Source: Pecten maximus (taxonomy: Eukaryota). Taken from it: a stretch of 64,000 nt of DNA. Position numbers and translations under genes: made by a program. Positions 419-62,500 of the stretch are shown here, piece after piece. Where the stretch lies: NCBI RefSeq assembly GCF_902652985.1, contig NC_047030.1, forward strand, positions 9,796,001-9,860,000, in the 5' to 3' direction. A model generated the notes under the pieces. It had not been told where the DNA came from and made no database searches. It worked only from the letters and a program-made list of their open reading frames with translations. Position 1 is the first letter of the stretch; every line of letters begins with the position of its first letter.

Positions 419-547
419 CTGTTTTATAACAAAATGTGGAAATAACATGATAACTTATTTATCATTAGAACAAAATATTCAAAATCAATCTAGAAACTTA
501 AATAATCAAATAAGATATGCATTATTGAAACTAGCATATAATAGCAT

Positions 548-4666: not shown

Positions 4667-4904
4667 CTGTAGACAGACATTAAGTATATCAATTATCATG
4701 TTTATATATATATATATCAGGGAAGTAAAAGTGAGAGTAAAAACAATTTAATAAATTGTAGAATTTTTGAAACAATCCGCCCCTTTTAAAGTTATATATA
4801 ATTATATAAGAAATTACCTATTTGGATTATGGTCTTGATGATCAGACATAAACTTGACTTTTAGTACTGTGTGGAGTTAATATGATGCCTGAGCTTAATG
4901 CAGC

Positions 4905-5850
4905 GAGGGCACTTTTCTATCATAAAACTTACTCGCCATAGAGAGGGCACTATATATTCTATCACAAACATGATACTGGAAGCAGTGAGGGTACTATTCT
5001 ATCACAAAACATACTGGAAGCAGTGAGGGCACTATTCTATCACAAAATATACTGGACACGGTGAGGGCACTATTCTATCACAAAACATACTGGACACGGT
5101 GGTGAGGGCACTATTCTATCACAAACATGATACTGGAAGCAGTGAGGGCACTATTCTATCACAAAACATACTGGACACGGTGAGGGCACTATTCTATCAC
5201 AAACATGATACTGGAAGCAGTGAGGGCACTATTCTATCACAAAACATACTGGACACGGTGGTGAGGGCACTATTCTATCACAAACATGATACTGGAAGCA
5301 GTGAGGGCACTATTCTATCACAAAACATACTGGACACGGTGAGGGCACTATTCTATCACAAAACATACTGGACACGGTGGTAAGGGCACTATTCTATCAC
5401 AAACATGATATTGGAAGCAGTGAGGGCACTATTCTATCACAAAACATATTGGACACGGTGAGGGCACTATTCTATCACAAAACATACTGGACACGATGAG
5501 GGCACTATTCTATCACAAACATGATACTGGAAGCAGTGAGGGCACTATTCTATCACAAAACATACTGGACACGGTGGTGAGGGCACTATTCTATCACAAA
5601 CATGATACTGGAAGCAGTGAGGGCACTATTCTATCACAAAGCATACTGGACATGGTGAGGGCACTATTCTATCACAAAACATACTGGACACGGTGGTGAG
5701 GGCACTATTCTATCACAAACGTGATACTGGAAGCAGTGAGGGCACTATTCTATCACAAACCATACTGGACACGGTGAGGGCACTATTCTATCACAAACAT
5801 GATACTGGAAGCAGTGAGGGCACTATTCTATTACAAAACATACTATGAAG
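4905..5850. repeat. ~39-42-bp minisatellite with two alternating variants (about 81-84-bp higher-order unit)
   Basis: Core gagggcactattctatcacaaa followed alternately by acatactggacacggt or catgatactggaagcagt. Confidence 0.93.
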
Positions 5851-6468
5851 CAGGTGTCCTTATACATGTGTATTTATTCTCAGTTTATCACTGAAATTAT
5901 TTTCATTCTTGATTTAACACATCTTTACATCAAATGAAACCAACAAAAATGATTTAAACAATTTACTTACAAAAACATTCCCATTGAAGAAAATTTTCAT
6001 AAATATTGAAGAATTGGAAGGAACAAATTACAATGTACATAGCCTGGTGCTGTACATCACAGTGAAGGATATATACACTGTACACATACAATTCTAGTAA
6101 GTTTTATACTTGAGTGTATGGACATACATGATCGTTTATATTTTATTGAAGCTTTACTTTGAAAATATTATTACATTTGCAAAAAATCTTTCTTCAATAC
6201 AATTCACAGACAGCATGATCACTGAGTTAGCACATCTCGATGTGTTATACACAGACATTTTGGTATTTGTTAACAGGTACAGAAATATCAGAGGTCAAAA
6301 ACGTGCTCTCTCTGGATCAGACATCATGCTAACTAATGGTGTGGGGAAAAGTGTTAATTGATGGGGTAATGTACAATTTATTAGGATAGGTTTGAGGAAG
6401 TGTTTCAACATCATGTACACAAGTGAAGGATGGGTTGGGGGGAGTGTTCCAACATCATGTACACTTAA

Positions 6469-7383: not shown

Positions 7384-10300
7384 TTAAAGAGGTGGATGGG
7401 TTGGGGGAAGTGTTCCAACATGTACACAAGCTTAAAGAGGTGGATGGGTTGGGGGAAGTGTTCCAACATGTACACTAGCTTAAAGAGGTGGATGGGTTGG
7501 GGGAAGTGTTCCAATATGTACACAAGTTTAAAGAGGTGGATGGGTTGGGGAAGTGTTCCAACATGTACACTAGCTTAAAGAGGTGGATGGGTTGGGGAAG
7601 TGTTCCAACATGTACACTAGCTTAAAGAGGTGGATGGGTTGGGGGAAGTGTTCCAACATGTACACTAGCTTAAAGAGGTGGATGGGTTGGGGAAGTGTTC
7701 CAACATGTACACAAGTTTAAAGAGGTGGATGGGTTGGGGGAAGTGTTCCAACATGTACACTAGTTCAAAGAGGTGGATGGGTTGGGGAAGTGTTCCAACA
7801 TGTACACTAGCTTAAAGAGGTGGATGGGTTGGGGGAAGTGTTCCAACATGTACACTAGCTTAAAGAGGTGGATGGGTTGGGGAAGTGTTCCAACATGTAC
7901 ACTAGATTAAAGAGGTGGATGGGTTGGGGAAGTGTTCCAACATGTACACTAGCTTAAAGAGAAGGATGGGTTGGGGGAAGTGTTCCAACATGTACACTAG
8001 CTTAAAGAGGTGGATGGGTTGGGTGAAGTGTTCCTACATGTACACTGGCTTAAAGAGGTGGATGGGTTGGGTGAAGTGTTCCAACATGTACACTGGCTTA
8101 AAGAGGTGGATGGGTTGGGGAAGTGTTCCAACATGTACACTAGCTTAAAGAGATGGATGGGTTGGGTGAAGTGTTCCTACATGTACACTGGCTTAAAGAG
8201 GTGGATGGGTTGGGTGAAGTGTTCCAACATGTACACTGGCTTAAAGAGGTGGATGGGTTGGGGAAGTGTTCCAACATTTACACAAGTTAAAGAGGTGGAT
8301 GGGTTGGGGAAGTGTTCCAACATTTACACAAGTTTAAAGAGGTGGATGGGTTGGGGGAAGTGTTCCAACATCTACACTAGCTTAAAGAGGTGGATGGGTT
8401 GGGGAAGTGTTCCAACATCTACACTAGCTTAAAGAGGTGGATGGGTTGGGGAAGTGTTCCAACATTTACACAAGTTTAAAGAGGTGGATGGGTTGGGGGA
8501 AGTGTTCCAACATCTACACTAGCTTAAAGAGGTGGATGGGTTGGGGAAGTGTTCCAACATTTACACAAGTTTAAAGAGGTGGATGGGTTGGGGGAAGTGT
8601 TCCAACATCTACACTAGCTTAAAGAGGTGGATGGGTTGGGGAAGTGTTCCAACATCTACACTAGCTTAAAGAGGTGGATGGGTTGGGGGAAGTGTTCCAA
8701 CATCTACACTAGCTTAAAGAGGTGGATGGGTTGGGGGAAGTGTTCCAACATGTACACTAGCTTAAAGAGATGGATGGGTTGGGTGAAGTGTTCCTACATG
8801 TACACTGGCTTAAAGAGGTGGATGGGTTGGGTGAAGTGTTCCAACATGTACACTGGCTTAAAGAGGTGGATGGGTTGGGGAAGTGTTCCAACATTTACAC
8901 AAGTTAAAGAGGTGGATGGGTTGGGGAAGTGTTCCAACATTTACACAAGTTTAAAGAGGTGGATGGGTTGGGGGAAGTGTTCCAACATCTACACTAGCTT
9001 AAAGAGGTGGATGGGTTGGGGAAGTGTTCCAACATGTACACTAGCTTAAAGAGGTGGATGGGTTGGGGGAAGTGTTCCAACATGTACACTAGCTTAAAGA
9101 GGTGGATGGGTTGGGGAAGTGTTCCAACATTTACACAAGTTAAAGAGGTGGATGGGTTGGGGAAGTGTTCCAACATTTACACAAGTTTAAAGAGGTGGAT
9201 TGGTTGGGGAAGTGTTCCAACATGTACACAAGCTTAAAGAGAAGGATGGGTTGGGGGAAGTGTTCCAAGATGTACACAAGCTTAAAGAGGTGGATGGGTT
9301 GGGGGAAGTGTTCCAACATGTACACTAGCTTAAAGAGGTAGATGGGTTGGGGGAAGTGTTCCAACATGTACACTAGCTTAAAGAGGTGGATGGGTTGGGG
9401 AAGTGTTCCAACATGTACACTAGCTTAAAGAGGTGGATGGGTTGGGGGAAGTGTTCCAACATGTACACTAGCTTAAAGAGGTGGATGGGTTGGGGGAAGT
9501 GTTCCAACATGTACACTAGCTTAAAGAGGTGGATGGGTTGGGGGAAGTGTTCCAACATGTACACTAGCTTAAAGAGGTAGATGGGTTGGGGGAAGTGTTC
9601 CAACATGTACACTAGCTTAAAGAGGTGGATGGGTTGGGGAAGTGTTCCAACATGTACACTAGCTTAAAGAGGTGGATGGGTTGGGGGAAGTGTTCCAACA
9701 TGTACACTAGCTTAAAGAGGTGGATGGGTTGGGGAAGTGTTCCAACGTGTACACTAGCTTAAAGAGGTGGATGGGTTGGGGAAGTGTTCCAATATGTACA
9801 CTGGCTTAAAGAGGTGGATGGGTTGGGGGAAGTGTTCCAACATGTACACTAGCTTAAAGAGGTGGATGGGTTGGGGGAAGTGTTCCAACGTGTACACAAG
9901 TTTAAAGAGGTGGATGGGTTGGGGGAAGTGTTCCAACATGTACACTAGCTTAAAGAGGTGGATGGGTTGGGGGAAGTGTTCCAACATGTACACTAGCTTA
10001 AAGAGAAGGATCGGTTGGGTGAAGTGTTCCAACGTGTACACTAGTTTAAAGAGGTGGATGGGTTGGGGGAAGTGTTCCAACATGTACACTAGCTTAAAGA
10101 GGTGGATGGGTTGGGGGAAGTGTTCCAACATGTACACAAGCTAAAAGAGGTGGATGGGTTGGGGGAAGTGTTCCAACATATACACTAGCTTAAAGAAAAG
10201 GATGGGTTGGGGGAAGTGTTCCAATATGTACACTGGCTTAAAGAGGTGGATGGGTTGGGGGAAGTGTTCCAACATGTACACAAGCTTAAAGAGGTGGATG

Positions 10301-12380
10301 GGTTGGGGGAAGTGTTCCAACATGTACACAAGCTTAAAGAAGTGGATGGGTTGGGGGAAGTGTTCCAACATGTACACTAGCTTAAAGAGATGGATGGGTT
10401 GGGGGAAGTGTTCCAACGTGTACACTAGCTTAAAGAGGTGGATGGGTTGGGGGAAGTGTTCCAACATGTACACTAGCTTAAAGAGGAGGATGGGTTGGGG
10501 AAGTGTTCCAACATGTACACTAGCTTAAAGAGGTGGATGGGCTGGGGGAAGTGTTCCAACATGTACACTAGCTTAAAGAGAAGGATGGGTTGGGGAAGTG
10601 TTCCAATATGTACACAAGTTTAAAGAGATGGATGGGTTGGGGAAGTGTTCCAACATGTACACTAGCTTAAAGAGGTGGATGGGTTGGGGAAGTGTTCCAA
10701 CATGTACACTAGCTTAAAGAGGTGGATGGGTTGGGGAAGTGTTCCCACATGTACACTGGCTTAAAGAGGTGGATGGGTTGGGGGAAGTGTTCCAACATGT
10801 ACACTAGCTTAAAGAGGTGGATGGGTTGGGGGAAGTGTTCCAACATGTACACAAGCTTAAAGAGGTGGATGGGTTGGGCAAGTGTTCCAACATGTACACT
10901 AGTTTAAAGAGGTGGATGGGTTGGGGAAGTGTTCCAACATGTACACTAGATTAAAGAGGTGGATGGGTTGGGGGAAGTGTTCCAATATGTACACAAGTTT
11001 AAAGAGATGGATGGGTTAGAGGAAGTGTTCCAACATGTACACTAGCTTAAAGAGGTGGATGGGTTGGGGGAAGTGTTCCAACATGTACACTAGCTTAAAG
11101 AGAAGGATGGGTTGGGGGAAGTGTTCCAACATGTACACTAGCTTAAAGAGGTGGATGGGTTGGGGAAGTGTTCCAACATGTACACTAGCTTAAAGAGGTG
11201 GATGGGTTGGGGAAGTGTTCCAACATGTACACTAGCTTAAAGAGGTGGATGGGTTGGGGAAGTGTTCCAACATGTACACTAGCTTAAAGAGGTGGATGGG
11301 TTGGGGAAGTGTTCCAACATGTACACTAGCTTAAAGAGGTGGATGGGTTGGGGGAAGTGTTCCAACATGTACACTAGCTTAAAGAGATGGATGGGTTGGG
11401 GGAAGTGTTCCAACATGTACACTAGCTTAAAGAGGTGGATGGGTTGGGGGAAGTGTTCCAACATGTACACAAGCTTAAAGAGGTGGATTGGTTGGGGGAA
11501 GTGTTCCAACATGTATACTAGCTTAAAGAGGTGGATGGGTTGGGGAAGTGTTCCAACATGTACACTAGCTTAAAGAGGAGGATGGGTTGGGGGAAGTGTT
11601 CCAACGTGTACACTAGCTTAAAGAGGTGGATGGGTTGGGGGAAGTGTTCCAACATGTACACTAGCTTAAAGAGGTGGATGGGTTGGGGAAGTGTTCCAAC
11701 ATGTACACTAGCTTAAAGAGGTGGATGGGTTGGGGAAGTGTTCCAACATGTACACTAGCTTAAAGAGGTGGATGGGTTGGGGGAAGTGTTCCAACATGTA
11801 CACTAGCTTAAAGAGGTGGATGGGTTGGGGAAGTGTTCCAACATGTACACTAGCTTAAAGAGGTGGATGGGTTGGGGGAAGTGTTCCAACGTGTACACTA
11901 GCTTAAAGAGGTGGATGGGTTGGGGGAAGTGTTCCAACATGTACACTAGCTTAAAGAGGTGGATGGGTTGGGGAAGTGTTCCAACATGTACACAAGCTTA
12001 AAGAGGTGGATGGGTTGGGGGAAGTGTTCCAACATGTACACAAGCTTAAAGAGGTGGATGGGTTGGGGGAAGTGTTCCAACATGTACACAAGCTTAAAGA
12101 GGTGGATGGGTTGGGGGAAGTGTTCCAATATGTACACAAGCTTAAAGAAGTGGATGGGTTGGGGGAAGTGTTCCAACATGTACACTAGCTTAAAGAGGTG
12201 GATGGGTTGGGTGAAGTGTTCCAACATGTACACTAGCTTAAAGAGGTGGATGGGTTGGGGGAAGTGTTCCAACATGTACTCTAGCTTAAAGAGGTGGATG
12301 GGTTGGGGGAAGTGTTCCAACATGTACACAAGCTTAAAGAAGTGGATGGGTTGGGGGAAGTGTTCCAACATGTACACTAG
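7384..12380. repeat. 47/48-bp G-rich satellite, about 105 copies
   Basis: Unit ttaaagaggtggatgggttgggg(g)aagtgttccaacatgtacactagc. Diverged units flank the array at about 6385-6465 and 12490-12800. Confidence 0.97.
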
Positions 12381-26499: not shown

Positions 26500-29035
26500 C
26501 ATTGTTTCCATATAACAACAGTTGCAGGTCTAGTGGCATGAAATTGTTTAGATTTCGGAACAATTCGATTCTCATGGATATAATGAAATAAGTAAGTTAG
26601 TAATAAGTTTACTAATGACCTGCAACTATTTACAACATCAAATAATTTTAAATGATAAATAAACTTTCGTGAAAACAAAAAACAGTGAGTTCTTTGATAG
26701 AAGCAACCGATAGCCGCCCGGTACTGTGCTAAGTCATTACCCATGGTCATCAAATATTACATAGAAAGTTGGGAGGCAGTCGGCAACATCTATCAAAATT
26801 AGCATACATGTATAAAAAGAAAGGCAGCCAAAACACTCAGATACATTTACAAGAGACATATAGAAGTAAGTAAAGGAAAGAAGAGAAGAGAGAAGAAATA
26901 AGGGATATATAAAATACATATTGAAAATAACTCAGAAATTGGTGTGATAATTCAGTTTGACAGCAAAAAGAAAACACTTTTAAAAAATATTCACAAAAAA
27001 AAATATTTACATGCGCTAGTGAGTTTTGCTGCTTTGAGTTGTTGAAAGATTCTTTCGAGATATTTAATGTACAAGTATCCACACAAATAGGTAATTTTTA
27101 TATATTCTTGTGATAAAAAAAAGGTGAGATAATAGTATTCAAAACACCACTTGGTATAAGTAATTTTTGTTAAACTTTGTGAAAAATTTGACACATCATG
27201 TGTGAAACTTAAAACAAAACAAGAAAAACAGAAGCAGAAAAAACCAACAAAATAATGCCACTTAATAAGCAGTAGATAATAATTGCAAGCTTCTTGAAAA
27301 CTTTAGAATGTAATAACATTGATAGTAGTTATCAACTTTGTTATGAGATTAGCTAGTAGGTAAAAGTAAACAAACTTTTGAAGTCTGTATATCTAATTGG
27401 GGTTATTATAAAAAAAGAACACCTTAGTAAGCATGTATATATAATGGTTATCAAAACTTAAGTGGTTTGACATTTTAAAAATAAATCATTGTTTATAATC
27501 ATATTTGTGTGAGAACGTATAAACTGACACAATGGACATGAATACAAATGCAGTTTTAACCAAACTTTGTGAAATTTACCTTTATGAAAAAGAGTAGTTA
27601 TTAGTAACATATATCAAACTTTATGAAATATTACTTTTATCAAACTGATATTTTGTAGACAAATAGTTAATAGTTATTAAACTTCATGAAATTTGATACT
27701 TTGTTTACAAGTAGGTACATTAAAGTAATTGTCAAAACAAAGTGAAATTTAAGTAAATGATGGAAATAAACACAAACTTGTGAAGTGTGTCCTTATGTTA
27801 GATTTTTGGTATAACATAATCTGACGAGTACACAGCTGACTTCACTCAGATGGGCGAGTGGATGGGATGGATTGATGTAAGTCTTTCTTACTTCTTATTA
27901 TAGTTTTGGATGAATCCACGGTACGTTTCAGGAAAATTCTACCATCATTTGTCCAGAAAGAATCTATTTCACCTCTCGTTTTTGCCGCGGACAGATCTTT
28001 TATGATTCCCTGGCGAAAAGTGGTCAGATCCTCAGTAATATAGATTTTTTCTGGGTTCGTTTTTAGGGCCTTTTTGGAGCGGAACACGGAATTTTTTATT
28101 TTCCAATTCCGAAAACGGCAGATAATCTGATATTTTCCGTTGTAAGGCTTACCAATGATATGTGATCTGCATATGTCATCTTCGGAAATGTCGACAGATA
28201 TTTGAGAACATATAGATACTATTTTCTGATCAGTGTTATGAATCTCACTGGAAGCTAACTTGACATTATGGAATCGCAGTGAGTTACGTCTACTGTATTG
28301 CTGTTGTTCTTCGTCACAAATTTCCAGTTGTTCAACTTTTTTCTCGAGAAAGTTACATTTATTTGTGAGTTCACTGTTAGATTGTTTTAGATTTTGGAGC
28401 TGCACACTCTGATCATTTATCCTATCTGTTAATTCATTTATGTTGTGGTGAAGTGGTTTAATCAATTCCCCCATCATTTCCGTAACCACTGCAGTCATCA
28501 TCACTTTAAAATGTGGAACCATAGCTTCCACCCAAACTGGGGCAATTGCTGCCGCAAAAGCAGGATTAGAGACGGTATTTTGTATCAAAGAATTGAAGTC
28601 AACAACCTTGCCTTTTCCTACATCTAATTTCAAAGATGGCGTCATCTCCGAATATTCCATATCACCCATAGAATTTCTTCTTCTGTGGGTCGGTTGGGAC
28701 GGGACACTGGGACTAGGGGTACTAGCACAGGTTTTCCGTTTGTTGTCGACAACGGGAGTACCTGCAGGCTGGTTTTTGTCTTCCTCCATTTTTTTGCTCG
28801 TCACGTACGATATCAGAACAAAGGAATGTCGCTATTCACAATTTTCTAAACAAGGGAAAGTACCTCAAAAATCACTCATTGGCTTTCTAAAAGTTCATCC
28901 GTAATAACTTGCAGCATTAGAAGCAATATATATCAAAGTTCATCGTAATCTAGCGCCGTACAAACATGATTTGCCAAAACTTTTTACCACTGAGGTACTT
29001 ACAGTGTAACTGCCACGGTCGCCATCTTGAATCCA
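26500..29035 (-). mobile_element. 3'-truncated non-LTR retrotransposon (CR1/L2-group-like): 5' UTR, ORF1, spacer, start of ORF2
   Basis: CAAGATGGCG motif at 29029-29020 near the 5' end; intact ORF1; MGNDLAQYRAAIGCF (about 26744-26700) resembles the leader preceding ORF2 in invertebrate CR1/L2-like LINEs; no endonuclease or RT follows. Confidence 0.65.
27842..28804 (-). CDS. LINE ORF1-like protein (coiled coil plus RRM/CTD)
   Basis: 320-aa ORF with a heptad region, EQQQYSRRNSLRFHNV, DICRSHIIG, IICRF, IYITEDLT and WTNDGRIFLK motifs typical of ORF1p; first ATG is 5 codons in. Confidence 0.8.
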   Translation of the reverse strand: MTSKKMEEDKNQPAGTPVVDNKRKTCASTPSPSVPSQPTHRRRNSMGDMEYSEMTPSLKLDVGKGKVVDFNSLIQNTVSNPAFAAAIAPVWVEAMVPHFKVMMTAVVTEMMGELIKPLHHNINELTDRINDQSVQLQNLKQSNSELTNKCNFLEKKVEQLEICDEEQQQYSRRNSLRFHNVKLASSEIHNTDQKIVSICSQISVDISEDDICRSHIIGKPYNGKYQIICRFRNWKIKNSVFRSKKALKTNPEKIYITEDLTTFRQGIIKDLSAAKTRGEIDSFWTNDGRIFLKRTVDSSKTIIRSKKDLHQSIPSTRPSE

Positions 29036-29551
29036 AGAGAGAGAAATCAAAATAATAAACGAAGTTGAAAAAGAATCGAGGACTCTTTGTTTATATCTGA
29101 TCGTGTTGTGGGAATAGAAAAGAACATGCAATCGCATAGATATATAGCTACTATTATCTTCATAATAATGTCCTTTAGTGAATTACAACAAAAGTAAAAG
29201 ATTCTTCACAGATTCCTGACTTCTGCGTAAATTTTATTTTGAGATTTCGTTATATGTGGAGTTAACTGTAGTTTAGTTTGTAACCCACTAATTGTTTGAC
29301 GTCTGAAGCAACAGAAGTTGACGCAACCATATTTTATCTTTAACTTTAATGACGCAATTCGTAATTAAATCTGTATTATCTACATTTACGCGAATCACGA
29401 AGACGCACATTAGCTCTGTTCCGGGTTGCGTCCGGATCTAATCGGTTCCGACTTTAAGCACGCCGGAAGTCACGTGATTTCATTAAAAATCTAGGCATGC
29501 CTACTTCCGGCGTCTGTAGCAACGTACAGAATATCGTCTGCTACATATAGT

Positions 29552-32440
29552 ATGCCGTCGAACAAGCATTGGTGCGCTGTACCCGAATGTAATTCAGACG
29601 GAAGGAAAATAGGTAGATATAGTTTTATGCAAAATGTTCAGTTTTTCCCCTTTCCGAGCGGTGAAAAGAAGCCCAAACTGCGAAAACGATGGCTTGACCA
29701 AATCATGAGAAAGGACTATGAAGCAAAACAACACCACCGTGTTTGCTCGCTCCATTTCATTGACGGTAAACCAACTGATGACCATCCAGTCCCTACACTC
29801 TTTGGTAGAAACAATTATGGAAGACCCAAATCAGAGAGGAATACTTCTTCCATTACAAAACGACAGGCTGCAGAGGTTAGTATTTACAATTTTGTAACTC
29901 CCATTGCTTTACATTGTAGATACAAATAAATTAATATATAGTTTACATCTGCCATACATGTACACTGCATACATGTTTATCAGAATCAGAATGTACATCA
30001 CTATCTTGTGCAAGAAGAAGTAATAATGATACTCTTACAGCATATACACGTAATTCACTGCAAAACTTTTTTCTGAAGTACCATTTACTTGTTGTTACTT
30101 TATATGGCTTGTTGACTTCAATTCAAAGCATTCAGTGAATGGAAATATGATACAACTATTGATCTATCTAGTTACTATCAGTTAAAAGTAATAAAAAACT
30201 ACTTGCCATATTAACAAAAATAATAATTAAAAATCCATTTGTTTATTTTCAAAGGAACTAGAATCTGATCCATCCTATGAAGAAATTGACTGTCCAAGTG
30301 AAATTGATACAGTGTTTTCTCCTCCATTTGTCTGTACTGTTGAGGTAGAAACAGATACAGTGGATTTATCTGATGATCATTCATGCTTCATATCTAAAGG
30401 TTAGTTATTATAGTGGGTTCTGTTATAATTTCAGTATGGTTAAAACCAGCAACATGGCCATGTAAACCTCATACATATTTTTACTGGCAAGGCCATTGCA
30501 CCCAAGATTCAAGATATCCCCACCTAGTTCTTAATATTTTTTTCAAAAATGTTCAGATGTGTCATGTTTATATAAACAATTTATGTACTCAGTGTTAATG
30601 ACTTCATTTATATCATATTTCATCATTATTTGTGTTAATGACTTCATTTATATCATATTTCATCATTATTTATTAAAGTGTTATTATATGTCATTATAAA
30701 GGGCATTTATTTTGTATTATTGTAGATATATCAGATGACCACCGCTACTCGGTGAGACAAACACTTATATCAGACAGTCACACATCCAGAGATGCTGCTG
30801 TCCAAACAGACTTGTCAATGTTCGACATACAAGACACTTCACAGAAACTTGAAGACCTGGAACAGAAATTGGCAAATAAGGATACCCTTTTGAGGGATTT
30901 ATTTGTTGATAAGGTGACCAGAACAGATGAAAGTGTAATGCAATATACAGGCATACCATCAAAGGATTTGCTTTTTGGACTGTTTGGTTAGTAAATTAAT
31001 TTGTATTTATTCAGTCAATCTTGTAAATATTGAAATTGTAACTTAAATTACACTGATCCCCATAATGCACATGGATATTTTGATAATTAATATATGGGTA
31101 AATAGCATTGTATGCTAGTCATTGGATCCTTATTTTAAGTATATTTATGAAATAGTTGCATGTATATTAAAAAAAATAGTGAACTTAATACATTCTTACA
31201 AACTACTTTGTATACTCATCAATGCATTAGTTTTACTAAGCATGAGTTTCTGCTGACCAAGACATCATAATATATTCAAGCATTAATATTCTTATGTCTA
31301 ATCTAGGCCTTAACAAGACATGTATCCATCAAAGCATCTAAGTCTGGTGTCAAGGTTAAAAGAAATTCAGTTTCACACCATTTAAAGGAGCAAATACTAG
31401 TGATACTATGCGTAGCATTCAAAGGAATGATTGAATCTCACAGAAACTTCCAACAATGTATGAGTTATTAAACAACTTAGTATTATATTGTTGGTCTGGA
31501 GGGTTTGATTATCATTTGATTTTATTTTTTATATCTTCTAAGTTGTGATTTTGTATGTGATATAGGAATACTAAATAGATCTTCTCCAACTCTGAAGTAC
31601 TGGTGTGGTCAAGGAGCTACTAAAGAGATGCCCAGCTACCAAGAGAATCCCCAGAAGCAAAAGAGTGGCCCAAAAAGGAAGCTTTCTCGGTTTGAGGAGT
31701 TCATTTTGACTTTAGTAAAGCTCCGTCTGGCATTGCTGACCTTTTTTTTAGCTGATATTTTTGGAATCTCGAAAAGCAGAGTCTCCCAAACATACATCAC
31801 TTGGATTAACTTTATGTTTGTCATTTTCACTCCATTATTGAAGTGGCCTTCATATAAACAAGTGAAAAAGTTTATGCCAAGATGTTTCAAATTACTTTTT
31901 CCAAAGACAACATGTATCATTGATTGTACAGAATTTTTTATTGAAAAACCAAGATCACCATCAGCACAAAGCTTAACATATAGTTCTTACAAACAAAGGA
32001 ACACTTTCAAAGCTCTGATCAGCATTACTCCATCTGGCTGTATTAATTTTGTGTCAAATCTATGGAGTGGTAACACATCTGACAAATACATAACAAGAGA
32101 AAGTGGATTTTTAGATAACATCAAACCTGGAGATGAAGTTATGGCAGACAGGGGTTTTTTGATAAGGGATTTATTATTGGAACATCATGCTACTTTGAAT
32201 ATCCCACCTTTTACTCGAAAATGTTCTTGGGGTAAAGGCAAACGTCTCAATGCTAGTGAAATTAAGAAAACACGAAATATAGCCAAACTTCGAATTCATG
32301 TGGAGAGAGCGATTGAACGACTGAAAAATTTTCACAGTTTGTCAAACACTATGCCCTTAAGTTGTAAGCCAGTTGCCAACCAGATGTTGAAAGTGTGTTC
32401 TTTCCTTTGTAATCTGCAGCGACCTTTAGTGAAAAAATGA
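29552..32440 (+). CDS. THAP-domain DDE (DDE_Tnp_4/Harbinger-type) transposase, 4 exons: 29552-29875, 30255-30399, 30726-30986, 31566-32440; 534 aa
   Basis: THAP C2CH (CAVPEC...FFPFP...W...VCSLHF...VPTLF), coiled coil, HTH (LADIFGISKSRVSQ), catalytic motifs IIDCTE, MADRGF and RIHVERAI; all introns GT-AG and phase-compatible, with no stops. Confidence 0.92.
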
Positions 32441-33087
32441 GTATAACAAGTTTACCATCAGTCAGTCTGTACCAGAACTACTACTGCATCAATTTCATAT
32501 TACACCATTTAATTTAGCAACTACATATAATTCATTGTATTATACAGGTGTCATCATTTATAATACAAATTGACATTTTTGTTACTTGAATTTTATGATT
32601 TATATATCTGGACATTTAATCTTAGACAAGAAAACATTCTGCTGAAACCAATATTATGAGCAGATTAAGCCAGTATTAAAACTTTTAGATGTTTTATGGA
32701 TATCAAGCTATAAAAATACTTCAAAATTGACATGGCAAGAAGCAATTTATTGATTGGATGGTTTTGAATCAACAACTTATAATTGCAATTTATGATTTGA
32801 AGATGAACAGTAAAATATGATGTGAATATTTAAAATGAATTTTTCTAGTCATTTTGTTTGCTTCATTCTGCTGCACAGCATTATACAAGTACATGCTTTA
32901 ATAAGCTTTTGATCCATTTAGATAAATTTCATTAAACACAATGTGAATACCATGACCAGATAATTTTGATGTAGGTTACTGCAAGTAACATTAAGATATC
33001 AATATAAATTTTCTAAGACATTGATCAGTAGCAAATAATAACCCTCTCATTATGGATCTTAGTCACTTTCTTACTAGTTTTTAATCA

Positions 33088-35103
33088 CTATTGCAACAAT
33101 GCCCTTGCAACATACTTGTTCCAAAATCTTTCAGATTTTTCAATGATTTGTTCATAAACAGCTGGGTCAAAATAGATCCTTTCCACAGAAAACCCTTTCT
33201 TTGTGTAAAATACAAAGTCACACCAGTTGATCTTACACACTCCCATCTGTCCCTGAATCTGAATGTACCAAGGGGAATCAGTTTTCAAATGGATGATATT
33301 TGCATCATCACTGTACAAGTGGTAGTGGGGATCATCACATACAGTTTGAGGCGTTGAATCTCTAAATGAATATGAACATTTCACCTCTAATAATCCTTTC
33401 CCACAACACTTACAGCACACAACACCATCGGGTGAGGCACCCATGAATGGATGTTCAGCATCAATAAACAAACCACACTCTCTGACTGATGACGTCTTGT
33501 GGCTAGTGGCATACTGTGTTGTGTACAACGACCGTGCAATAGGTTCATGATCCTTGCCAAACTTGAGAACATCTGGACCACTTGACCTCGAGAACATAGC
33601 TGGTGGTTGGGGACACATGATTTTCTTCACAATATAGTTATCATAGTTTTCATTAAATCTAAAGTGCATCACTGAGGAAAATATGGAGGCTGTCACACGT
33701 CCTGTCCTATAAGCGAACCAATCAGGATTATCAGCTTGACCCCTGGTCATTTCTTCAATCCTGTTCACAGTTTCTGCACCAGAGTGTGCTGAATTAACTT
33801 TTGAGGCTAAGGCATTTACATCATCACCATTACCTTTCAGAGTTTCTGCAATTTCCAGCAATGTAGGTGGGAAAGTTTCATCATCTAAACTGTCATCATC
33901 ATCACTTGGTGGATCCAAAGCTTGTAAAAGTACACTGTTACTCCCCTTACACAAAGTGAAGATCTCTTTCTCCACCTGTCTTTTTGACAAACACTCTGAC
34001 CTTACTGTGGGATTGTAGTTTTCAGCACTAGCAGACTTGGGCTTGGGTGTTACCTTGTTTACACGGATATCCATGTCCTCAATCTCCAACGGTGTAGTTG
34101 TTTTCTTGGGTTTGTCCCACACACAAGCAACATCTGTACCAACCTCAGTGCTCCTGTCTTGATGTCGTTCGCAGAATGCTGACATGGCAAACAGCAAAGC
34201 CACACAATGCTTACATGTACCATCATCACTGAAAAAACAAATATATAAAAACATTTAATTTCAATTAACTGGAAATAAAACTATCAACGTAGAATGGTAC
34301 ATAAATACATTGTTCATACTGATGTATGTTGATCAATTTCCTCTTGTATTTAAGTTCTTGCATATATTAATCAATTATTTGTATATCATACACAAATCCT
34401 TGTTTTAATTGAACAACTATACTATTTTGCCATTACAATGCTGCGGTAATGGCTGTGAGCTACAATATAAATGTAACTACCGGGTTAGTACCCAACATAT
34501 TCTGCTCATAGAAGAACTACACTTGTGTTGACGTTGAATTTTGGTTACATGCTCACTTATTTGACTCTATTTAAAATGTACTTACGCAACACATGTACAA
34601 CCACCAGATTTCACATGTCCGTCCTGCTTTATAAGGAGCCATGTAGAATATGGTGTAGCACTTTGTCTAGTCTCTGGAATACAGGAGGCCTTCACATACA
34701 TGTACGACCCACTGTTTGGAATGGCACCGAGACACACTTCACTGATGTGATGATCAAGATACAACTTGTAGCCACTGTCACTTTTATAATTCTTCAACCT
34801 TGTTTCAGACCAACCACAAACTTTCATGAAATAAATCAGAATGTCACAATACTCCACGGTAGGGATAGATGTAAGATCTGATATCCACTGTACCTGACCG
34901 ACGTCATCTAACACAATCCCGTCGACGGTTCGTCTCAAGACGTCCATATCATGATAATCATCACAGGCAACAACCTCTAAGTCTAACTCCTTCGCTAGCG
35001 AACACAATCTAACCAAATCGTTCTTGCGATATAAACTGCATGAAATACCTCTCTCTTGTAAATATCCCTTCAAATCCGGCACGTGGAATCCGTCGAAATC
35101 CAT
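33088..35103 (-). CDS. SWIM zinc finger plus YqaJ/lambda-exonuclease-family protein, 2 exons: 35103-34586, 34228-33088; 552 aa
   Basis: SAP-like N-terminus (VPDLKGYLQERGI); SWIM CTCVA-DDGTCKH across a phase-2 intron; YqaJ motifs TRGQ..W...R.GRVTAS, FGKDHE, GASPDG, LEVKC, YIQIQGQM. Confidence 0.92.
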
Positions 35104-35731
35104 TAGAGACGATATTTTGTAACGCGAAAGTTGAAAGCGGTGTAAACGGTAAGGAAGTCGGCTCAAACCGGAAGTTTACATGCCTAGATTTTTGTTTCTA
35201 TGGGGACCGTTTTCTTCCTCCACACAAGAGTTTCCACTAACCCGGAACAGAGCTATTAGTAAATGTTGTTTAAATAGCCGAGCAATTTAACATCAAAACA
35301 TTTCAGATTTCTATTGAGGTTTCCCAGCTTCTATATGGTAAGTTCTCTTGCTTTTTAATTATATAACATCTTATACCTTAAAATGTAACTATAAAATTTA
35401 TTTATATCAAACCAATAGGGAAACATGTCATTACAACTTATATCAATCATGCTTGTTAGCTCTGATGGAATCGCACGAGGGATCTTGGAGAAAACCCACG
35501 TGGTCTGGCAGGTGTCCTCCATACCTTTCGCGTCCGGACGAATTCCTGCCGCCTTTGTACACACAAATATTAAACTTAAATATATTTTCCGTTTTACTGA
35601 ATAAGTCTATCGACCATACAGGATGTTTTCGTTTTTAAAATCCTCTCTGCATTTCAGTACTTGATCTATGTAATTCTCCTCTCTGTATTACCCCTGTATT
35701 GCCCTTTAGAGTATGGATGTAGACTATGTAC

Positions 35732-59521: not shown

Positions 59522-62500
59522 ATGTTAATGGTTATATTCATGGTAGTTTTCGGGACCACACACGGAAAACAGTGTAAGTTCAGTCATTCGTTCATTGTGA
59601 TGATAACGGTGATATGTATCAGGTTTTCAAATAATGGTTTTAACCTATTTTTCACATAGAAAATCTAGATTTAAAATATAAATTATATGCAGAACATGTT
59701 CTGTGAATGGCGTTTCTCTCCCGACCATAAAGTCGAATACACCAACTAAACTTAAAAAAATCATTATGATACCCTGTTAATCCCAGAACAACTAATGAAC
59801 CTCCCAAGGCAAATATCAAATGACTTTTGGGATGTTTTGTTTTGTTTTGGTTTTGCGATGTTTGTTTTGAATTTGTTTTGGTTTTGTGATGTTTGTTTTG
59901 GTTTTGTGATGTTTTTGATTTTGTGATGTTTGTTTTGGTTTTGTGATGTTTTTGATTTTGTGATGTTTGTTTTGGTTTTCTGATGTTTGTTTTGGTTTTG
60001 TTTTGGCTTTGTGATGTTTGGTTTGGTTTTCTGATGCTTGTTTTGGTTTTGCGATGTTTGTTTTGAATTTGTTTTGGTTTTGTGATGTTTTTGATGTTGT
60101 GATGTTTGTTTTGGTTTTGTGATGTTTTTGATTTTGTGATGTTTGTTTTGGTTTTGTGATGTTTGTGTTGGTTTTGTGATGTTTGTTTTGGCTTTGTTTT
60201 GGCTTTGTGATGTTTGTTTTGGTTTTGTGATGTTTTTGATTTTGTGATGTTTGTTTTGGTTTTGTGATGTTTGTGTTGGTTTTGTGATGTTTGTTTTGGC
60301 TTTGTTTTGGCTTTGTGATGTTTGTTTTGGTTTTGTGATGTTTGTTTTGGTTTTGTTATGGCTTTGTAATGTTTGTTTTGGTTTTGTGATGTTTGTTTTG
60401 GTTTTGTGATGTTTGTATTGGTTTTGTTTTTGTTTTGTGATATTTTGTTCTTTGTGATGACTCCTTTTGTTTTGTGATGTTTATTTTGGTTTTGTGATGT
60501 TTGTTTTGGTTTTGTGATGTTTTTGATTTTGTGATGTTTGTTTTGGTTTTGTGATGTTTGTGTTGGTTTTGTGATGTTTGTTTTGGCTTTGTTTTGGCTT
60601 TGTGATGTTTGTTTTGGTTTTGTGATGTTTGTTTTGGTTTTGTGATGTTTGTTTTGGTTTTGTGATGTTTGTTTTGGTTTTGTGATGTTTGTTTTGGTTT
60701 TGTTTTGGCTTTGTGATGTTTGTTTTGGTTTTGTGATGTTTTTGATTTTGTGATGTTTGTTTTGGTTTTGTTATGGCTTTGTAATGTTTGTTTTGGTTTT
60801 GTTTTGGTTTTGTGATATTTTTTTCTTTGTGATGATTCCTTTTGTTTTTTATGTTTGCTTTGCTTTTTGATGTTTGTTTTGGCTTTGTGATGTTTGTTTT
60901 GGTTTTGTTTTGATTTTGTGATGTTTGTTTTGGTTTTGTGATGTTTGTTTTGGTTTTGTTATGGCTTTGTAATGTTTGTTTTGGTTTTGTGATGTTTGTT
61001 TTGGTTTTGTGATGTTTGTATTGGTTTTGTTTTTGTTTTGTGATATTTTGTTCTTTGTGATGACTCCTTTTGTTTTGTGATGTTTGTTTTGGTTTTGTGA
61101 TGTTTATTTTGATTTTGTGATGTTTGTATTGGTTTTGTTTTGGTTTTGTGATATTTTTTTTCTTTGTGATGATTCCTTTTGTTTTATTATTTTTTTTTTT
61201 TTTTTTATATGTTTGTTTTGGTTTTGTGATGTTTGGTTTGGTTTTGTATTGGCTTTGTGGCGTTTGTTTTGGTTTGGTATTGGTTTTGATTGGTTTTTTG
61301 ATGTTTGGTTTGGATTTGTGATGTTTGTTTTGGTTTTATGATGTTTCTTTGATTTTATGACGTTTGGTTTGGTTCTGTGATGATTATTTTGGTTTTGTTT
61401 TGGTTTTGATTTTACTTGTTGTTCACTTAATATCTATTATTCTAATAAAACAGAAAGTATTTTTTATCTTCAGTTGACGTCAACATGTTTGGAAGGGACT
61501 TTATCCTATCTTTCAACCGAAATTCTTACAGAAACGACACAACAAGGCTAAGGATAATGAACAATCTAAAGGACAAGGTCACGGTCACTGTTTATAGCGC
61601 TTCCGGGTTAGAGGTCAGTAAATCAGACGACAGGTCAGCTATAATTGAACATCACCTTCGGACAACATGTGAGCGGACGTTTACCGCTGGCGACTGTGTC
61701 GTGCGCATCAAAAGTATCGCGAATGTTCGGATGACAGTTCTCGATATTATGGACGGGGAAATATTTTATTTCGTTCTTCCGCTTGACAAAGCTGGAAATG
61801 AATACATCATGGCGACAAGTTTACTGCATGCTAACTACACTTGTGATCTTGTTACGATTTACCCAATGACAGAATTCTACTTCTCCGTGGCTCATTCAGC
61901 TCAAGTGTCATTTTCAAACAAAACAAGTGTTTGTAGCCATGACATGTGCCAGGTTCCAGTCCCGCGCGAAAACGCGATGTTTCAAATCCGTAGTTCAAAG
62001 GACATGACGGGAATGAAGGTTACAGGTAACAAGCCGTTCGTGGTGTTCTGTGGTGGGGCCATTTCCGCCGGAAGAACATTCATGAATCAACTTCCACCTA
62101 TAGGGATGTACGGAACATCATATCAAACATGGCCGACTCAGTTTTCCGGTTTTGTGAGTCTGATGTCACGATGTAATGATACACACGTGCGTGTGTATGG
62201 TGCAACAAATCAGACAATTGACCTTGACCTTGGGAGTCACACTGATGTGGCGGTGCTGGCACAAGATGTCCTTGTGATATCAAGTGATAAACCAATCATG
62301 GCGATCCAAAGTTGGATCATGCGCTATGCCACACATAGACTTACGTTAGTTCCCCTCGTCACAGCCAACCATACATGTGAGGACCACAAACACTCAACAC
62401 AGGTATTTTTAAAACTGCATGATTAGCTTCTAGTACGGTTTCTAATTTTAAAGGTACGCATTAGTTTTCTACTGAGAACATTGTATAGCTACTGTTGTTG

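What the first reader, a model, noticed from the sequence alone, without database searches (positions are those of the whole stretch)
29411..35255. Apparently intact two-gene transposon pairing a THAP-DDE transposase with a phage-type SWIM-YqaJ exonuclease
Seen: perfect TIRs, a TSD, and two convergent, fully spliceable, stop-free genes (534 and 552 aa) with catalytic residues present (DDE triad; PD...EVK). This suggests a young, possibly active copy. Known: this architecture defines ISL2EU/IS4EU elements, and YqaJ is the lambda-exonuclease/Red-alpha family of 5'-3' exonucleases. To my knowledge the role of the nuclease in transposition has not been shown experimentally. Inference: the SAP-like/SWIM/YqaJ protein may resect the donor break or process transposon ends to steer repair (for example, homologous restoration of the donor copy), making this a self-contained cut-and-resect system and a tractable candidate for reconstitution. 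The family may be new; the superfamily is not.
Basis: partly seen in the sequence, partly recalled or inferred. Interest (0 to 1): 0.78.

Follow-up and report, generated by a model that had tools for sequence, protein, structure and literature searches.

The report
Young, mobile two-gene ISL2EU transposon
This is an intact, transcribed and still insertion-polymorphic copy of an already known kind of jumping gene (ISL2EU), which carries a transposase and a phage-like DNA-end nuclease whose role in jumping has never been tested.

Summary
The element is real. It spans window 29412-35254 (5843 nt), has perfect 16-nt inverted ends, and carries two convergent, open, spliceable genes. One is a 534-aa THAP + HTH + DDE_Tnp_4 transposase. 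The other is a 552-aa protein with a lambda-exonuclease/YqaJ domain and an intact active site.

Published work defines this architecture as ISL2EU (PHIS superfamily), so the kind is known. The family is young and very probably mobile:
- There are three copies at least 99.7% identical, at three different sites.
- Empty alleles exist for two of those sites, on alternative contigs of the same assembly. For the window site they also appear in two other DNA samples.
- RNA contigs are spliced exactly at two predicted introns.

Neither TA nor ATT is duplicated. The empty sites read CAATT, which fits the published ISL2EU rule A|AT|T with an AT duplication. The window copy itself has an aberrant left junction: two target bases lost and nothing duplicated.

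Transposase-nuclease pairs are abundant here: 68 of the 135 transposase hits examined have a YqaJ hit within 8 kb. This element is therefore not unique.

The parts
29412..35254 (.). Whole element, 5843 nt, under the AT-duplication reading. T29411 and A35255 are then target bases.
   Evidence: DNA contigs of runs X4 and X8 skip exactly 29412-35254 (table 5). The alternative contig C1484 lacks it.
29412..29427 (+). Left terminal inverted repeat, AGCTCTGTTCCGGGTT
   Evidence: I5; identical in all three copies.
35239..35254 (-). Right terminal inverted repeat
   Evidence: I5.
29485..29510 (+). Left subterminal mirror block (AAAAATCTAGGCATG..ACTTCCGG), upstream of the transposase ATG. A candidate transposase-binding or promoter module (inference).
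   Evidence: I1 (26 nt, 88%).
35168..35193 (-). Right subterminal mirror block, upstream of the nuclease ATG
   Evidence: I1.
29525..29539 (+). Second mirror block (TACAGAATATCGTCT), just before the transposase ATG
   Evidence: I11 (15 nt, 93%).
35107..35121 (-). Second mirror block, just before the nuclease ATG
   Evidence: I11.
29552..29875 (+). Transposase exon 1 (108 codons): THAP zinc finger, C8-x4-C13-x51-C65-x2-H68. S24 is private to this copy; the other copies have G.
   Evidence: Pfam THAP 5e-13. The exon1/exon2 joint is seen in X9 and as a loose end in X5. S24 versus G: and 29621 A>G in X4 and X8.
30255..30399 (+). Transposase exon 2 (acidic linker)
   Evidence: GT..AG joints 29876-30254 and 30400-30725 in an X9 contig.
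30726..30986 (+). Transposase exon 3 (conserved QTD...YTGxPS region)
   Evidence: Open frame. Homologue P0062 reads GLFGILDKASPTLKYW straight across the predicted exon 3/4 junction. The X9 joint 30987->31597 is only approximate.
31566..32440 (+). Transposase exon 4 with stop: HTH_Tnp_4 plus the DDE_Tnp_4 core (D119, D194, E246)
32441..33087 (.). Region between the two convergent stop codons (3' UTRs). This copy lacks 15 nt at 33040 that the other copies have.
   Evidence: An X5 contig runs unbroken over 31802-33474.
34586..35103 (-). Nuclease exon 1: SAP-like helix-linker-helix, a middle region, a beta-sheet, and the CxC half of a SWIM-type motif
34229..34585 (-). Nuclease intron (GTAAGT..TTTCAG). 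Copy 3 has a 63-nt deletion inside it.
   Evidence: Depth is zero in X5 and X9 over 34140-34539 while both exons are covered. The annotated protein P0001 and the homologues read ..CTCVADDGTCKHC.. across the junction.
33088..34228 (-). Nuclease exon 2 with stop: CxH half of the SWIM-type motif, a poorly modelled acidic linker, and the lambda-exonuclease/YqaJ domain
29405..29411 (.). Aberrant left junction. The flank ends ..CACATT, with CA lost relative to the empty allele and no AT duplication.
   Evidence: (letters CA between the two sides of the joint).

Best explanation
WHAT IT IS. This is an autonomous DNA transposon of the ISL2EU group (PHIS superfamily, cut-and-paste type). It belongs to a very low-copy family that has moved recently in this species.

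HOW IT MOST LIKELY WORKS
- The transposase (THAP finger, helix-turn-helix, DDE_Tnp_4 core) recognises the 16-nt inverted ends, and probably the mirrored subterminal blocks too. This step is inferred.
- It excises the element and inserts it at CA|AT|T-type sites, normally duplicating AT. The target is shown by the empty sites (with a no-duplication reading not excluded, rival 1); the chemistry is inferred.
- Each end also carries the same promoter-proximal module in mirror image, so the two convergent genes are probably switched on together. This is inferred.
- The second gene makes a 5'->3' lambda-exonuclease-like enzyme with a complete active site, tethered to DNA-binding modules (SAP-like, SWIM-type).

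THE NUCLEASE. Its conserved linkage to the transposase across deep divergence argues that it serves the element's own propagation. My ranking of its possible jobs is all inference:
- About 45%: it resects the double-strand gap left at the donor site, so that the gap is repaired from the sister chromatid or homologue and the donor copy is restored.
- About 25%: it trims the 5' strands or flank remnants on the excised element, or at the target, before or after strand transfer.
- About 30%: something else, or no direct role.

THIS COPY. The window copy is the most derived of the three. It has an aberrant left junction, two private amino-acid changes and a private 15-nt deletion.
For: DOMAINS AND CATALYTIC RESIDUES
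- The predicted nuclease fold matches LHK-Exo (TM 0.71 on the target, E 1e-9) and lambda exonuclease (TM 0.55-0.60).

COPIES
- Three full copies lie at three different sites with different flanks.
- Copy 1 versus copy 2: 6-7 substitutions. Copy 1 versus copy 3: 16. Copy 2 versus copy 3: 12. There are also three indels, all outside coding sequence.
- All six exon pieces are open and all four introns keep GT..AG in 3 of 3 copies.

EMPTY SITES
- Copy 2 sits on contig C1713. The matching place on C9 lacks it and reads ..GACAATTGACG...
- Contig C1484 matches the window's flanks at 97.6-97.9% and lacks the window copy.
- One contig each in DNA runs X4 and X8, from two other samples, skips 29412-35254.
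- An X4 contig end carries the flank of copy 2 (table 7).

TRANSCRIPTS
- An X9 contig is joined at 29875|30255 and at 30399|30726, both GT..AG.
- X5 has the last 11 letters of exon 1 ahead of exon 2.
- Intron bins are empty in both runs.

LINKAGE OF THE TWO GENES
- 68 of 135 transposase hits in this genome have a YqaJ hit within 8 kb, 58 of them convergent.
- Same-contig pairs occur in other bivalves. One example is consecutive gene numbers on a 58,588-nt Saccostrea contig.
- The same nuclease domain is fused to an unrelated Mutator-like transposase in this genome.
- It is also reported in KolobokE elements (PMC9587614, passages).

LITERATURE
- ISL2EU definition and the A|AT|T target: PMC4482050 (passages).
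Against: - No transposition event was observed directly. Polymorphism shows past mobility, not present mobility.
- The family has only three full copies, one decayed copy (C10, 87-96% identity, with stops) and a few fragments. No derived short elements were found: 8 exact end matches in the genome, 6 of them from the three copies.
- All 5 coding differences among the copies change an amino acid. That is what neutral decay after insertion looks like.
- The window copy's junction breaks the AT rule.
- The inverted repeat starts AG, not the 'usual' GG of ISL2EU (PMC4482050).
- I could not place the transposase in a tree with named ISL2EU, Spy and Harbinger references.
- RNA evidence comes from assembled contigs of runs whose RNA label is a guess. 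No contig bridges the nuclease intron, and the third transposase intron is only roughly supported.
- For the nuclease's role there is no direct evidence. The sister group Spy transposes without such a protein (PMC11304231).
Confidence: 0.85

Rival explanations
1. Spy-like insertion without any duplication. The element's true ends would be T...A (29411-35255, 17-nt repeat), and it would be inserted bluntly into AA|TT. The 'AT duplication' would then be a reading artefact.
For: The empty site of copy 2 (..CAATTG..) fits 'A + TAGCT..AGCTA + T' as well as it fits 'AT + AGCT..AGCT + AT'. All six ends have T/A outside AGCT. Spy is the sister clade, inserts at AAWTT and makes no duplication (PMC11304231, passages). 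Repbase files Spy under ISL2EU (PMC12730594, passages).
Against: Published ISL2EU families were read as AT duplications, with paralogous empty sites (PMC4482050). Spy elements have one ORF, and this one has two. Sequence alone cannot separate the two readings here. The window copy needs a 4-nt loss under either reading.
Confidence: 0.2
2. The family, or at least this copy, looks intact but no longer moves. It would be a recently dead lineage whose polymorphism is left over from past activity.
For: 5 of 5 coding differences among copies change an amino acid. The window copy has two private transposase changes, a private 15-nt deletion and a damaged left junction. Copy number is very low and there are no derived short elements.
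Against: The copies are at least 99.7% identical. Both inverted repeats are perfect in 3 of 3 copies, and all reading frames and splice sites are intact. Transcripts are present in two runs from two studies. Insertions are still segregating.
Confidence: 0.3
3. The nuclease gene is a passenger with no role in the element's own movement. For example, it could be a captured viral gene that acts against host or rival DNA.
For: Spy transposes without it (PMC11304231). The nuclease evolves faster than the transposase core: it is at most 50% identical in non-scallop bivalves, against 64-75% for the transposase core.
Against: The pairing and the convergent arrangement persist across transposases only 36-61% identical: 68 of 135 hits are paired, 58 of them convergently. 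They also persist in other bivalves. Catalytic residues are invariant in 15 of 15 sequences from molluscs, a crinoid, a tick, a fish and a barnacle. The same domain has been recruited independently by other transposases (PMC9587614).
Confidence: 0.1
4. A domesticated host gene pair at a fixed locus, or an assembly duplication, rather than a transposon.
For: The genes are annotated only as 'uncharacterized protein'.
Against: Three copies have unrelated flanks that begin exactly at the inverted repeats. Empty alleles exist for two sites.
Confidence: 0.02

Closest known systems
ISL2EU (= IS4EU) DNA transposons of animals (Repbase; PHIS superfamily of Han et al. 2014/2015)
   Same: A THAP + HTH + DDE transposase with a second gene encoding a YqaJ nuclease. 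The target is A|AT|T. The length is near the reported mean of about 4.8 kb. The host is an animal.
   Different: The inverted repeat starts AG rather than the usual GG. The window copy has a junction without duplication. Whether this family is already catalogued could not be checked: no Repbase or Dfam was available and supplements were closed.
Spy transposons (sister clade of ISL2EU)
   Same: A related DDE core. An AT-rich palindromic target (AAWTT versus CAATT here). The insertion can formally be read as having no duplication.
   Different: Spy has a single ORF, no THAP domain and no nuclease gene. It has been shown active in human cells (PMC11304231).
PIF/Harbinger
   Same: A DDE_Tnp_4/HTH_Tnp_4 transposase and a two-gene layout.
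   Different: The Harbinger partner is a Myb/SANT DNA-binding protein, and the duplication is 3-bp TWA (PMC4482050, PMC9179366). Neither holds here.
KolobokE elements, and the Mutator-like::YqaJ fusion ORF in this genome
   Same: A lambda-exonuclease-like PD-(D/E)xK nuclease recruited by a DNA transposon.
   Different: The transposase superfamily is different, and the nuclease is fused downstream of the transposase rather than encoded by a separate convergent gene (PMC9587614, passages).
Lambda exonuclease / LHK-Exo / herpesvirus alkaline nucleases (YqaJ, Viral_alk_exo)
   Same: The fold (TM 0.71 to LHK-Exo). The motifs E, PD, ExK and QxQxQ. The N-terminal W..R.G..TAS motif.
   Different: The transposon protein has about 340 extra N-terminal residues (SAP-like, SWIM-type, acidic linker). 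No single-strand annealing partner gene is present in the element. Activity, polarity and oligomeric state are untested.

Membership tests
ISL2EU | Transposase with a DDE (DDE_Tnp_4-type) core plus HTH and THAP domains | tested here: met
   (THAP 5e-13, HTH_Tnp_4 1.3e-11, DDE_Tnp_4 1.7e-43). D119, D194 and E246 invariant in 12 of 12.
ISL2EU | Second ORF encoding a YqaJ exonuclease-domain protein | tested here: met
ISL2EU | AT duplication at an A|AT|T target (family level) | tested here: met
   Copy 2: the occupied site reads ..CAAT[element]ATTG.. and the empty site ..CAATTG... Copy 3 has the same flanks. The empty allele of the window site contains CAATTA. A no-duplication reading with T..A ends is not excluded.
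ISL2EU | AT duplication flanking this particular copy | tested here: not met
   The left flank ends TT and the right flank starts AT. Relative to the empty allele, CA is lost and nothing is duplicated.
ISL2EU | Inverted repeats of 6-259 bp, 'usually' starting GG | tested here: inconclusive
   The length of 16 nt is within range, but the repeat starts AG. The paper says 'usually', so this does not exclude membership.
ISL2EU | Transposase groups with named ISL2EU references in a phylogeny | not testable with these tools
   No labelled Repbase or Dfam sequences were available, and supplements were closed.
Spy | Single ORF, no nuclease gene, no THAP domain | tested here: not met
   Two genes and a THAP domain are present.
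PIF/Harbinger | Myb/SANT partner protein and a 3-bp TWA duplication | tested here: not met
   The partner is a YqaJ nuclease. The empty sites show no 3-bp duplication.
Lambda exonuclease / YqaJ (PD-(D/E)xK) | Pfam YqaJ score above the curated cut-off | tested here: met
   68.0 bits against a cut-off of 22.
Lambda exonuclease / YqaJ (PD-(D/E)xK) | Catalytic motifs E...PD...ExK...QxQxQ | tested here: met
   They align to GASPDG / GLIEIKC / QMQTQM of 3syy and are invariant in 15 of 15 sequences.
Lambda exonuclease / YqaJ (PD-(D/E)xK) | Fold | tested here: met
   In the model, residues 121-379 are mostly above pLDDT 88, apart from a loop near 201-220. Best Foldseek matches are LHK-Exo (E 1.1e-9, TM 0.71 on the target) and lambda exonuclease (E 8e-9 to 2e-7).
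Lambda exonuclease / YqaJ (PD-(D/E)xK) | 5'->3' exonuclease activity on 5'-phosphorylated duplex ends; ring-shaped trimer | not testable with these tools
   Needs biochemistry. No oligomer was modelled.
SWIM zinc finger | CxCxnCxH motif recognised by a profile | tested here: inconclusive
   The motif C169-x-C171 ... C-K-H is split by the intron and conserved. Pfam SWIM was reported in 0 of 7 full-length homologues at E<=0.01. UniRef names two homologues 'SWIM-type domain-containing protein'. An Atlas cluster has SWIM in 12% of members, at score 0.89.
SAP / HeH | Helix-linker-helix DNA-binding motif recognised by a profile | tested here: inconclusive
   HeH E=0.02, below the cut-off. SAP E=0.0088 in 1 of 7 homologues. 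Atlas clusters carry SAP in 54-56% of members, at score 0.94. The model has two helices (8-17, 27-39) at pLDDT 87-95. Foldseek gave no significant match.

The most novel reading that the evidence does not exclude
The tethered lambda-exonuclease-like enzyme would be what makes ISL2EU transposition effectively replicative. It would resect the donor gap so that homologous repair restores the element. It would also act at the integration step. The window copy's junction, with two target bases lost and no duplication, would be a trace of that end-processing. On this view, the difference between ISL2EU (nuclease present, AT 'duplication') and its nuclease-less sister Spy (no duplication) reflects how the ends are processed rather than where the transposase cuts.
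Probability: 0.2. Interest if true: 0.65.

Novelty: new member of a known kind. Interest (0 to 1): 0.4.

Why it matters
ISL2EU elements have been catalogued since 2007. In the library searched, I found no report of one that has been shown to transpose, and none on what their nuclease does.

A natural family with three near-identical intact copies, segregating insertions, spliced transcripts and documented empty sites is a reasonable starting point for a reconstitution experiment. That experiment would ask why several unrelated DNA transposons have recruited a lambda-exonuclease-like enzyme.

The value is practical, as a well-characterised candidate, rather than conceptual. The same genome holds dozens of similar pairs, and some families have more identical copies than this one.

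Tried and rejected
REJECTED READINGS
- ATT duplication. Copies 2 and 3 have AAT on the left and ATT on the right, and the window's empty allele already holds both ATT.
- TA duplication. The empty site of copy 2 is CAATTG, not CAATATTG.
- The 'empty' allele as an excision footprint. I think this unlikely. The allele recreates the CAATT target seen at the other two sites, and the same CA is seen in the assembly's alternative contig and in two other samples.

SEARCHES THAT GAVE NOTHING USEFUL
- Empty site for copy 3. The alternative contig C312 diverges about 180 nt before the junction.
- Short derived elements. A genome-wide search with the 16-mer, allowing up to 1 mismatch, gave 25 matches. Eight were exact: 6 are the ends of the three copies, 1 is a solo fragment on C15, and 1 lies in a 35-nt satellite on C7. 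The reversed-pattern control gave 0 and 3.
- The C7 satellite shares nothing beyond the 16-mer. I take it for chance.
- Solved structure for the DDE exon: nothing at E<=0.5, only chance-level rows.
- Fold search with nuclease exon 1: no match at E<=0.001. I did not try the wider library.
- Pfam on the neighbouring 320-aa ORF: only coiled-coil-like rows below their cut-offs.

NOT DONE
- A phylogeny against named ISL2EU, Spy and Harbinger references. No such sequences were at hand.
- Supplements were not opened. Table S2 of PMC4482050, which lists ISL2EU families and species, may bear on whether this family is already catalogued.
- The spliced proteins were never joined. All searches, alignments and folds used single exons, and the joined step was left out.

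Full report
**1. What is there**

The stretch is AT-rich animal-type DNA, with introns bounded by GT..AG. A perfect inverted repeat closes it: 29411-29427 against 35239-35255, 17 nt (I5).

Two further mirror-image blocks lie inside each end:
- AAAAATCTAGGCATG..ACTTCCGG at 29485-29510 and 35168-35193 (26 nt, 88%).
- TACAnAATATCGTCT at 29525-29539 and 35107-35121 (15 nt, 93%), directly ahead of the two start codons.

Reading the frames gives two gene models.
- On the + strand there are four exons, 29552-29875, 30255-30399, 30726-30986 and 31566-32440. They hold 108 + 48 + 86 + 290 whole codons plus two split codons, which makes 534 aa.
- On the - strand there are two exons, 35103-34586 and 34228-33088. 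They hold 172 + 379 codons plus one split codon, which makes 552 aa.

I searched every exon on its own. I never joined the exons, and the joined step is left out of this work.

**2. Domains and catalytic residues**

Pfam, exon by exon, gave:
- Transposase exon 1: THAP, 5e-13.
- Transposase exon 4: HTH_Tnp_4, 1.3e-11, and DDE_Tnp_4, 1.7e-43, covering the full profile (1-158 of 158).
- Nuclease exon 2: YqaJ, 1.4e-18, and Viral_alk_exo, 1e-15.
- Nuclease exon 1: only HeH, 0.02, below its cut-off.
- Transposase exons 2 and 3: nothing meaningful.

I aligned the DDE exon with 11 homologues of 47-75% identity. D119 (IIDCTE), D194 (MADRGF) and E246 (HVERAI) are invariant.

The nuclease exon aligns to the solved exonuclease 3syy (E 1.2e-7). 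GASPDG, GLLEVKC and YIQIQGQM lie on that protein's GASPDG, GLIEIKC and YIKQMQTQM.

Across 15 sequences from molluscs, a crinoid, a tick, a fish and a barnacle, several residues are invariant:
- E228, P266, D267, E281, K283, Q323 and Q327.
- The motif W170..R174.G176 R177.T179.S181. From my own recollection of the lambda exonuclease literature, the Arg of this motif binds the 5' phosphate. I did not test that here.

A model of exon 2 (mean pLDDT 78; residues 121-379 mostly above 88, apart from a loop near 201-220) matches three groups of solved structures:
- LHK-Exo, E 1.1e-9, TM 0.71 on the target.
- Lambda exonuclease, E 8e-9 to 2e-7.
- Herpesvirus alkaline nucleases.

The N-terminal 120 residues of exon 2 are poorly modelled and acidic.

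For nuclease exon 1:
- The model shows two confident helices (8-17 and 27-39) and four strands before the C-x-C.
- Foldseek found nothing significant.
- The Atlas look-alike clusters carry SAP in 54-56% of members, and one carries SWIM in 12%.
- C169 and C171 are invariant, and homologues continue with a near-invariant C-K-H.
- Pfam reported SWIM in 0 of 7 full-length homologues, and SAP below its cut-off in 1 of 7.

So 'SAP-like' and 'SWIM' are reasonable labels, but they are not proven.

**3. Copies and age**

The genome (G000, 918 Mb) has three full-length copies:
- The window copy.
- C1713:538-6397.
- C16:17822625-17828421.

There is also a decayed, end-truncated copy on C10 (87-96% identity in pieces, with stops in the nuclease) and a few fragments.

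The flanks of the three copies are unrelated and change exactly at the repeat.

Differences between the copies:
- Copy 1 versus copy 2: 6-7 substitutions and a 15-nt indel at 33040.
- Copy 3: 12-16 substitutions from the other two, and a 63-nt deletion inside the nuclease intron.

All exon pieces are open and all splice sites are kept in 3 of 3 copies. The 5 coding differences all change an amino acid.

The window copy alone has S24 (others G), T35 in exon 2 (others A), and the 15-nt deletion. Runs X4 and X8 also read G at 29621.

**4. Insertion polymorphism and the target site**

Copy 2:
- Contig C1713 matches C9 near 21.68 Mb over both flanks, at 93.7-98%.
- C9 has no element there and reads ..ACGACAATTGACG..
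- The occupied form reads ..ACGACAAT[AGCT...AGCT]ATTGACG..

The window copy:
- Contig C1484 matches the window's two flanks at 97.9% and 97.6%.
- It reads ..GGCACATTCAATTAGTAAATG.. without the element.
- One DNA contig in X4 and one in X8, from other samples, join 29411 to 35255 with the letters CA between. That is the same empty allele.

Three conclusions follow.
- The insertions segregate. If C1713 and C1484 are alternative haplotypes, which is the simplest reading, the assembled individual is heterozygous at two of the three sites.
- The target is CAATT(G/A) at 3 of 3 sites. Copy 2 carries an AT on each side. This is the published ISL2EU rule A|AT|T (PMC4482050, passages read).
- The window copy is irregular. 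Against its empty allele it has lost CA and duplicated nothing.

A reading with no duplication and T..A ends fits copy 2 equally well. It cannot be excluded from sequence.

**5. Expression**

X9 and X5 are labelled RNA only by guess. The evidence that they are RNA comes:
- An X9 contig is joined at 29875|30255 and at 30399|30726. Both are GT..AG and both are exactly as predicted.
- X5 carries the last 11 letters of exon 1 ahead of exon 2.
- Intron bins are empty in both runs.

The third transposase intron is seen only as an imprecise joint, 30987->31597. Homologue P0062 runs straight across the predicted exon 3/4 junction.

No contig bridges the nuclease intron. Three observations still support it:
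- Its bins are empty.
- The database's own 500-aa annotated product, 100% identical over exon 2 and named 'uncharacterized protein LOC117344514 [Pecten maximus]' by NCBI, reads ..CTCVADDGTCKHC.. across it.
- Homologues read across it in the same way.

That annotated product starts at an internal Met. Homologues share the longer N-terminus of my model.

An X5 contig covers 31802-33474 without a break, across both 3' ends.

**6. Context in the genome and beyond**

The own-genome search scored 135 of 631 transposase candidates (36-100% identity) and 108 of 370 nuclease candidates. Both lists are truncated.

Of the 135 transposase hits, 68 have a nuclease hit within 8 kb. Of these, 58 are convergent, 9 divergent and 1 on the same strand, with a median gap of 877 nt.

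Several other families show 4-9 identical-scoring open copies. This element is therefore one of many.

Outside the genome:
- The nuclease is 78% identical to a protein of another scallop, and at most 50% identical elsewhere.
- The transposase core is 64-75% identical to proteins of oysters, pearl oysters and mussels.
- Several hits of the two searches lie on contigs of identical length. One pair has consecutive gene numbers.

A separate 961-aa ORF, with nuclease hits of identical score at 9 loci, fuses a Mutator-like transposase to a YqaJ domain.

**7. Literature**

I read passages only, in the following papers:
- PMC4482050: ISL2EU is a DDE/HTH/THAP transposase plus a YqaJ ORF. It makes an AT duplication at A|AT|T, and its repeats usually start GG. 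The function of the second ORF is unknown.
- PMC4122938 and PMC9179366: the same architecture.
- PMC3673617: the name 'ISL2EU/IS4EU', with Kapitonov and Jurka 2007 in its reference list.
- PMC11304231: Spy is the sister clade of ISL2EU, has one ORF, is active in human cells, and makes no duplication at AAWTT.
- PMC12730594: Repbase files Spy under ISL2EU.
- PMC9587614: KolobokE encodes a lambda-exonuclease-like nuclease.

Five searches listed no experimental work on ISL2EU transposition or on its nuclease: 'ISL2EU', 'YqaJ'+'transposon', 'IS4EU', 'YqaJ'+'THAP' and 'ISL2EU'+'excision'. This holds for the library searched only. Supplements were closed.

**8. Verdict**

The thing is a young, low-copy, expressed, segregating ISL2EU transposon, which makes it a new member of a known kind.

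The nuclease is a bona fide lambda-exonuclease-type enzyme by sequence and by predicted fold. It is tightly and anciently linked to the transposase, so a role in the element's life cycle is likely.

Which role it plays is open. I favour donor-gap resection that steers repair towards restoring the element, but only weakly. Against an essential catalytic role, the nuclease-free sister group transposes without it.

The element around the closest foreign homologue therefore could not be examined.

Noticed in passing
L069:3363-6248 (G000:C5:8406500-8413500), minus strand; similar hits at 9 loci: A single 961-aa open frame fuses a Mutator-like transposase domain (PF20700, 2e-83) to a C-terminal YqaJ nuclease domain (3.4e-13). 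This is a second, independent marriage of this nuclease with a DNA transposase in the same genome. It may correspond to the published KolobokE type.
   Followed up: partly
G000, many loci listed (for example C9:2758343, C13:34993275, C18:6692071, C7:40247199, C10:44454728): Other ISL2EU-like families have 4-9 identical-scoring open transposase frames, each with a nearby YqaJ hit. Some may be more active than the family in the window.
   Followed up: partly
window 31802-33474: One contig of run X5 (RNA by guess) runs unbroken across both stop codons and the 647-nt spacer. Either the 3' ends of the two convergent transcripts overlap, which could give double-stranded RNA, or there is DNA in the run.
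   Followed up: no
window 27842-28804 (minus strand) and 28611-29037: A 320-aa open frame with only coiled-coil-like Pfam rows lies just left of the element. The stretch 28611-29037 recurs at 97-99% identity at four other loci. So another young repeat sits next door.
   Followed up: partly
L002:6398-6580 (flank of copy 2 on C1713): The first 150-180 nt beside copy 2 belong to a high-copy repeat: dozens of copies, most at 94-95% identity (range 86-95%). Copy 2 therefore inserted into another repeat.
   Followed up: no
L037:1-1869 (G000:C7:46160035-46161903): A 35-nt satellite of 53 units. Its unit junction resembles the element's 16-nt end, with 1 mismatch in most units. Nothing else is shared, so this is probably chance.
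   Followed up: partly
run X7: A small DNA run labelled as another organism ('organism B') holds 43% of the sampled words of the stretch. It could be a close relative, a mislabel or a transfer.
   Followed up: no
window 546-2114, 4900-5853, 7384-12380, 13291-13722, 14138-14912, 18113-20163, 42433-43267, 47281-48182, 59825-61410: The window is unusually rich in tandem arrays. Examples are a 48-nt unit x 105 and a 27-nt unit x 76. These explain the composition spikes seen.
   Followed up: no
window 30592-30671: A perfect 40-nt tandem duplication lies inside transposase intron 2. Copy 3 differs from the other two by four substitutions in the first unit.
   Followed up: no
run X8 over the whole element: 30 of the 44 contigs laid are only 95-99% identical and carry small indels and internal deletions. 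Another individual therefore holds more diverged copies or alleles of the family than the assembly does.
   Followed up: no
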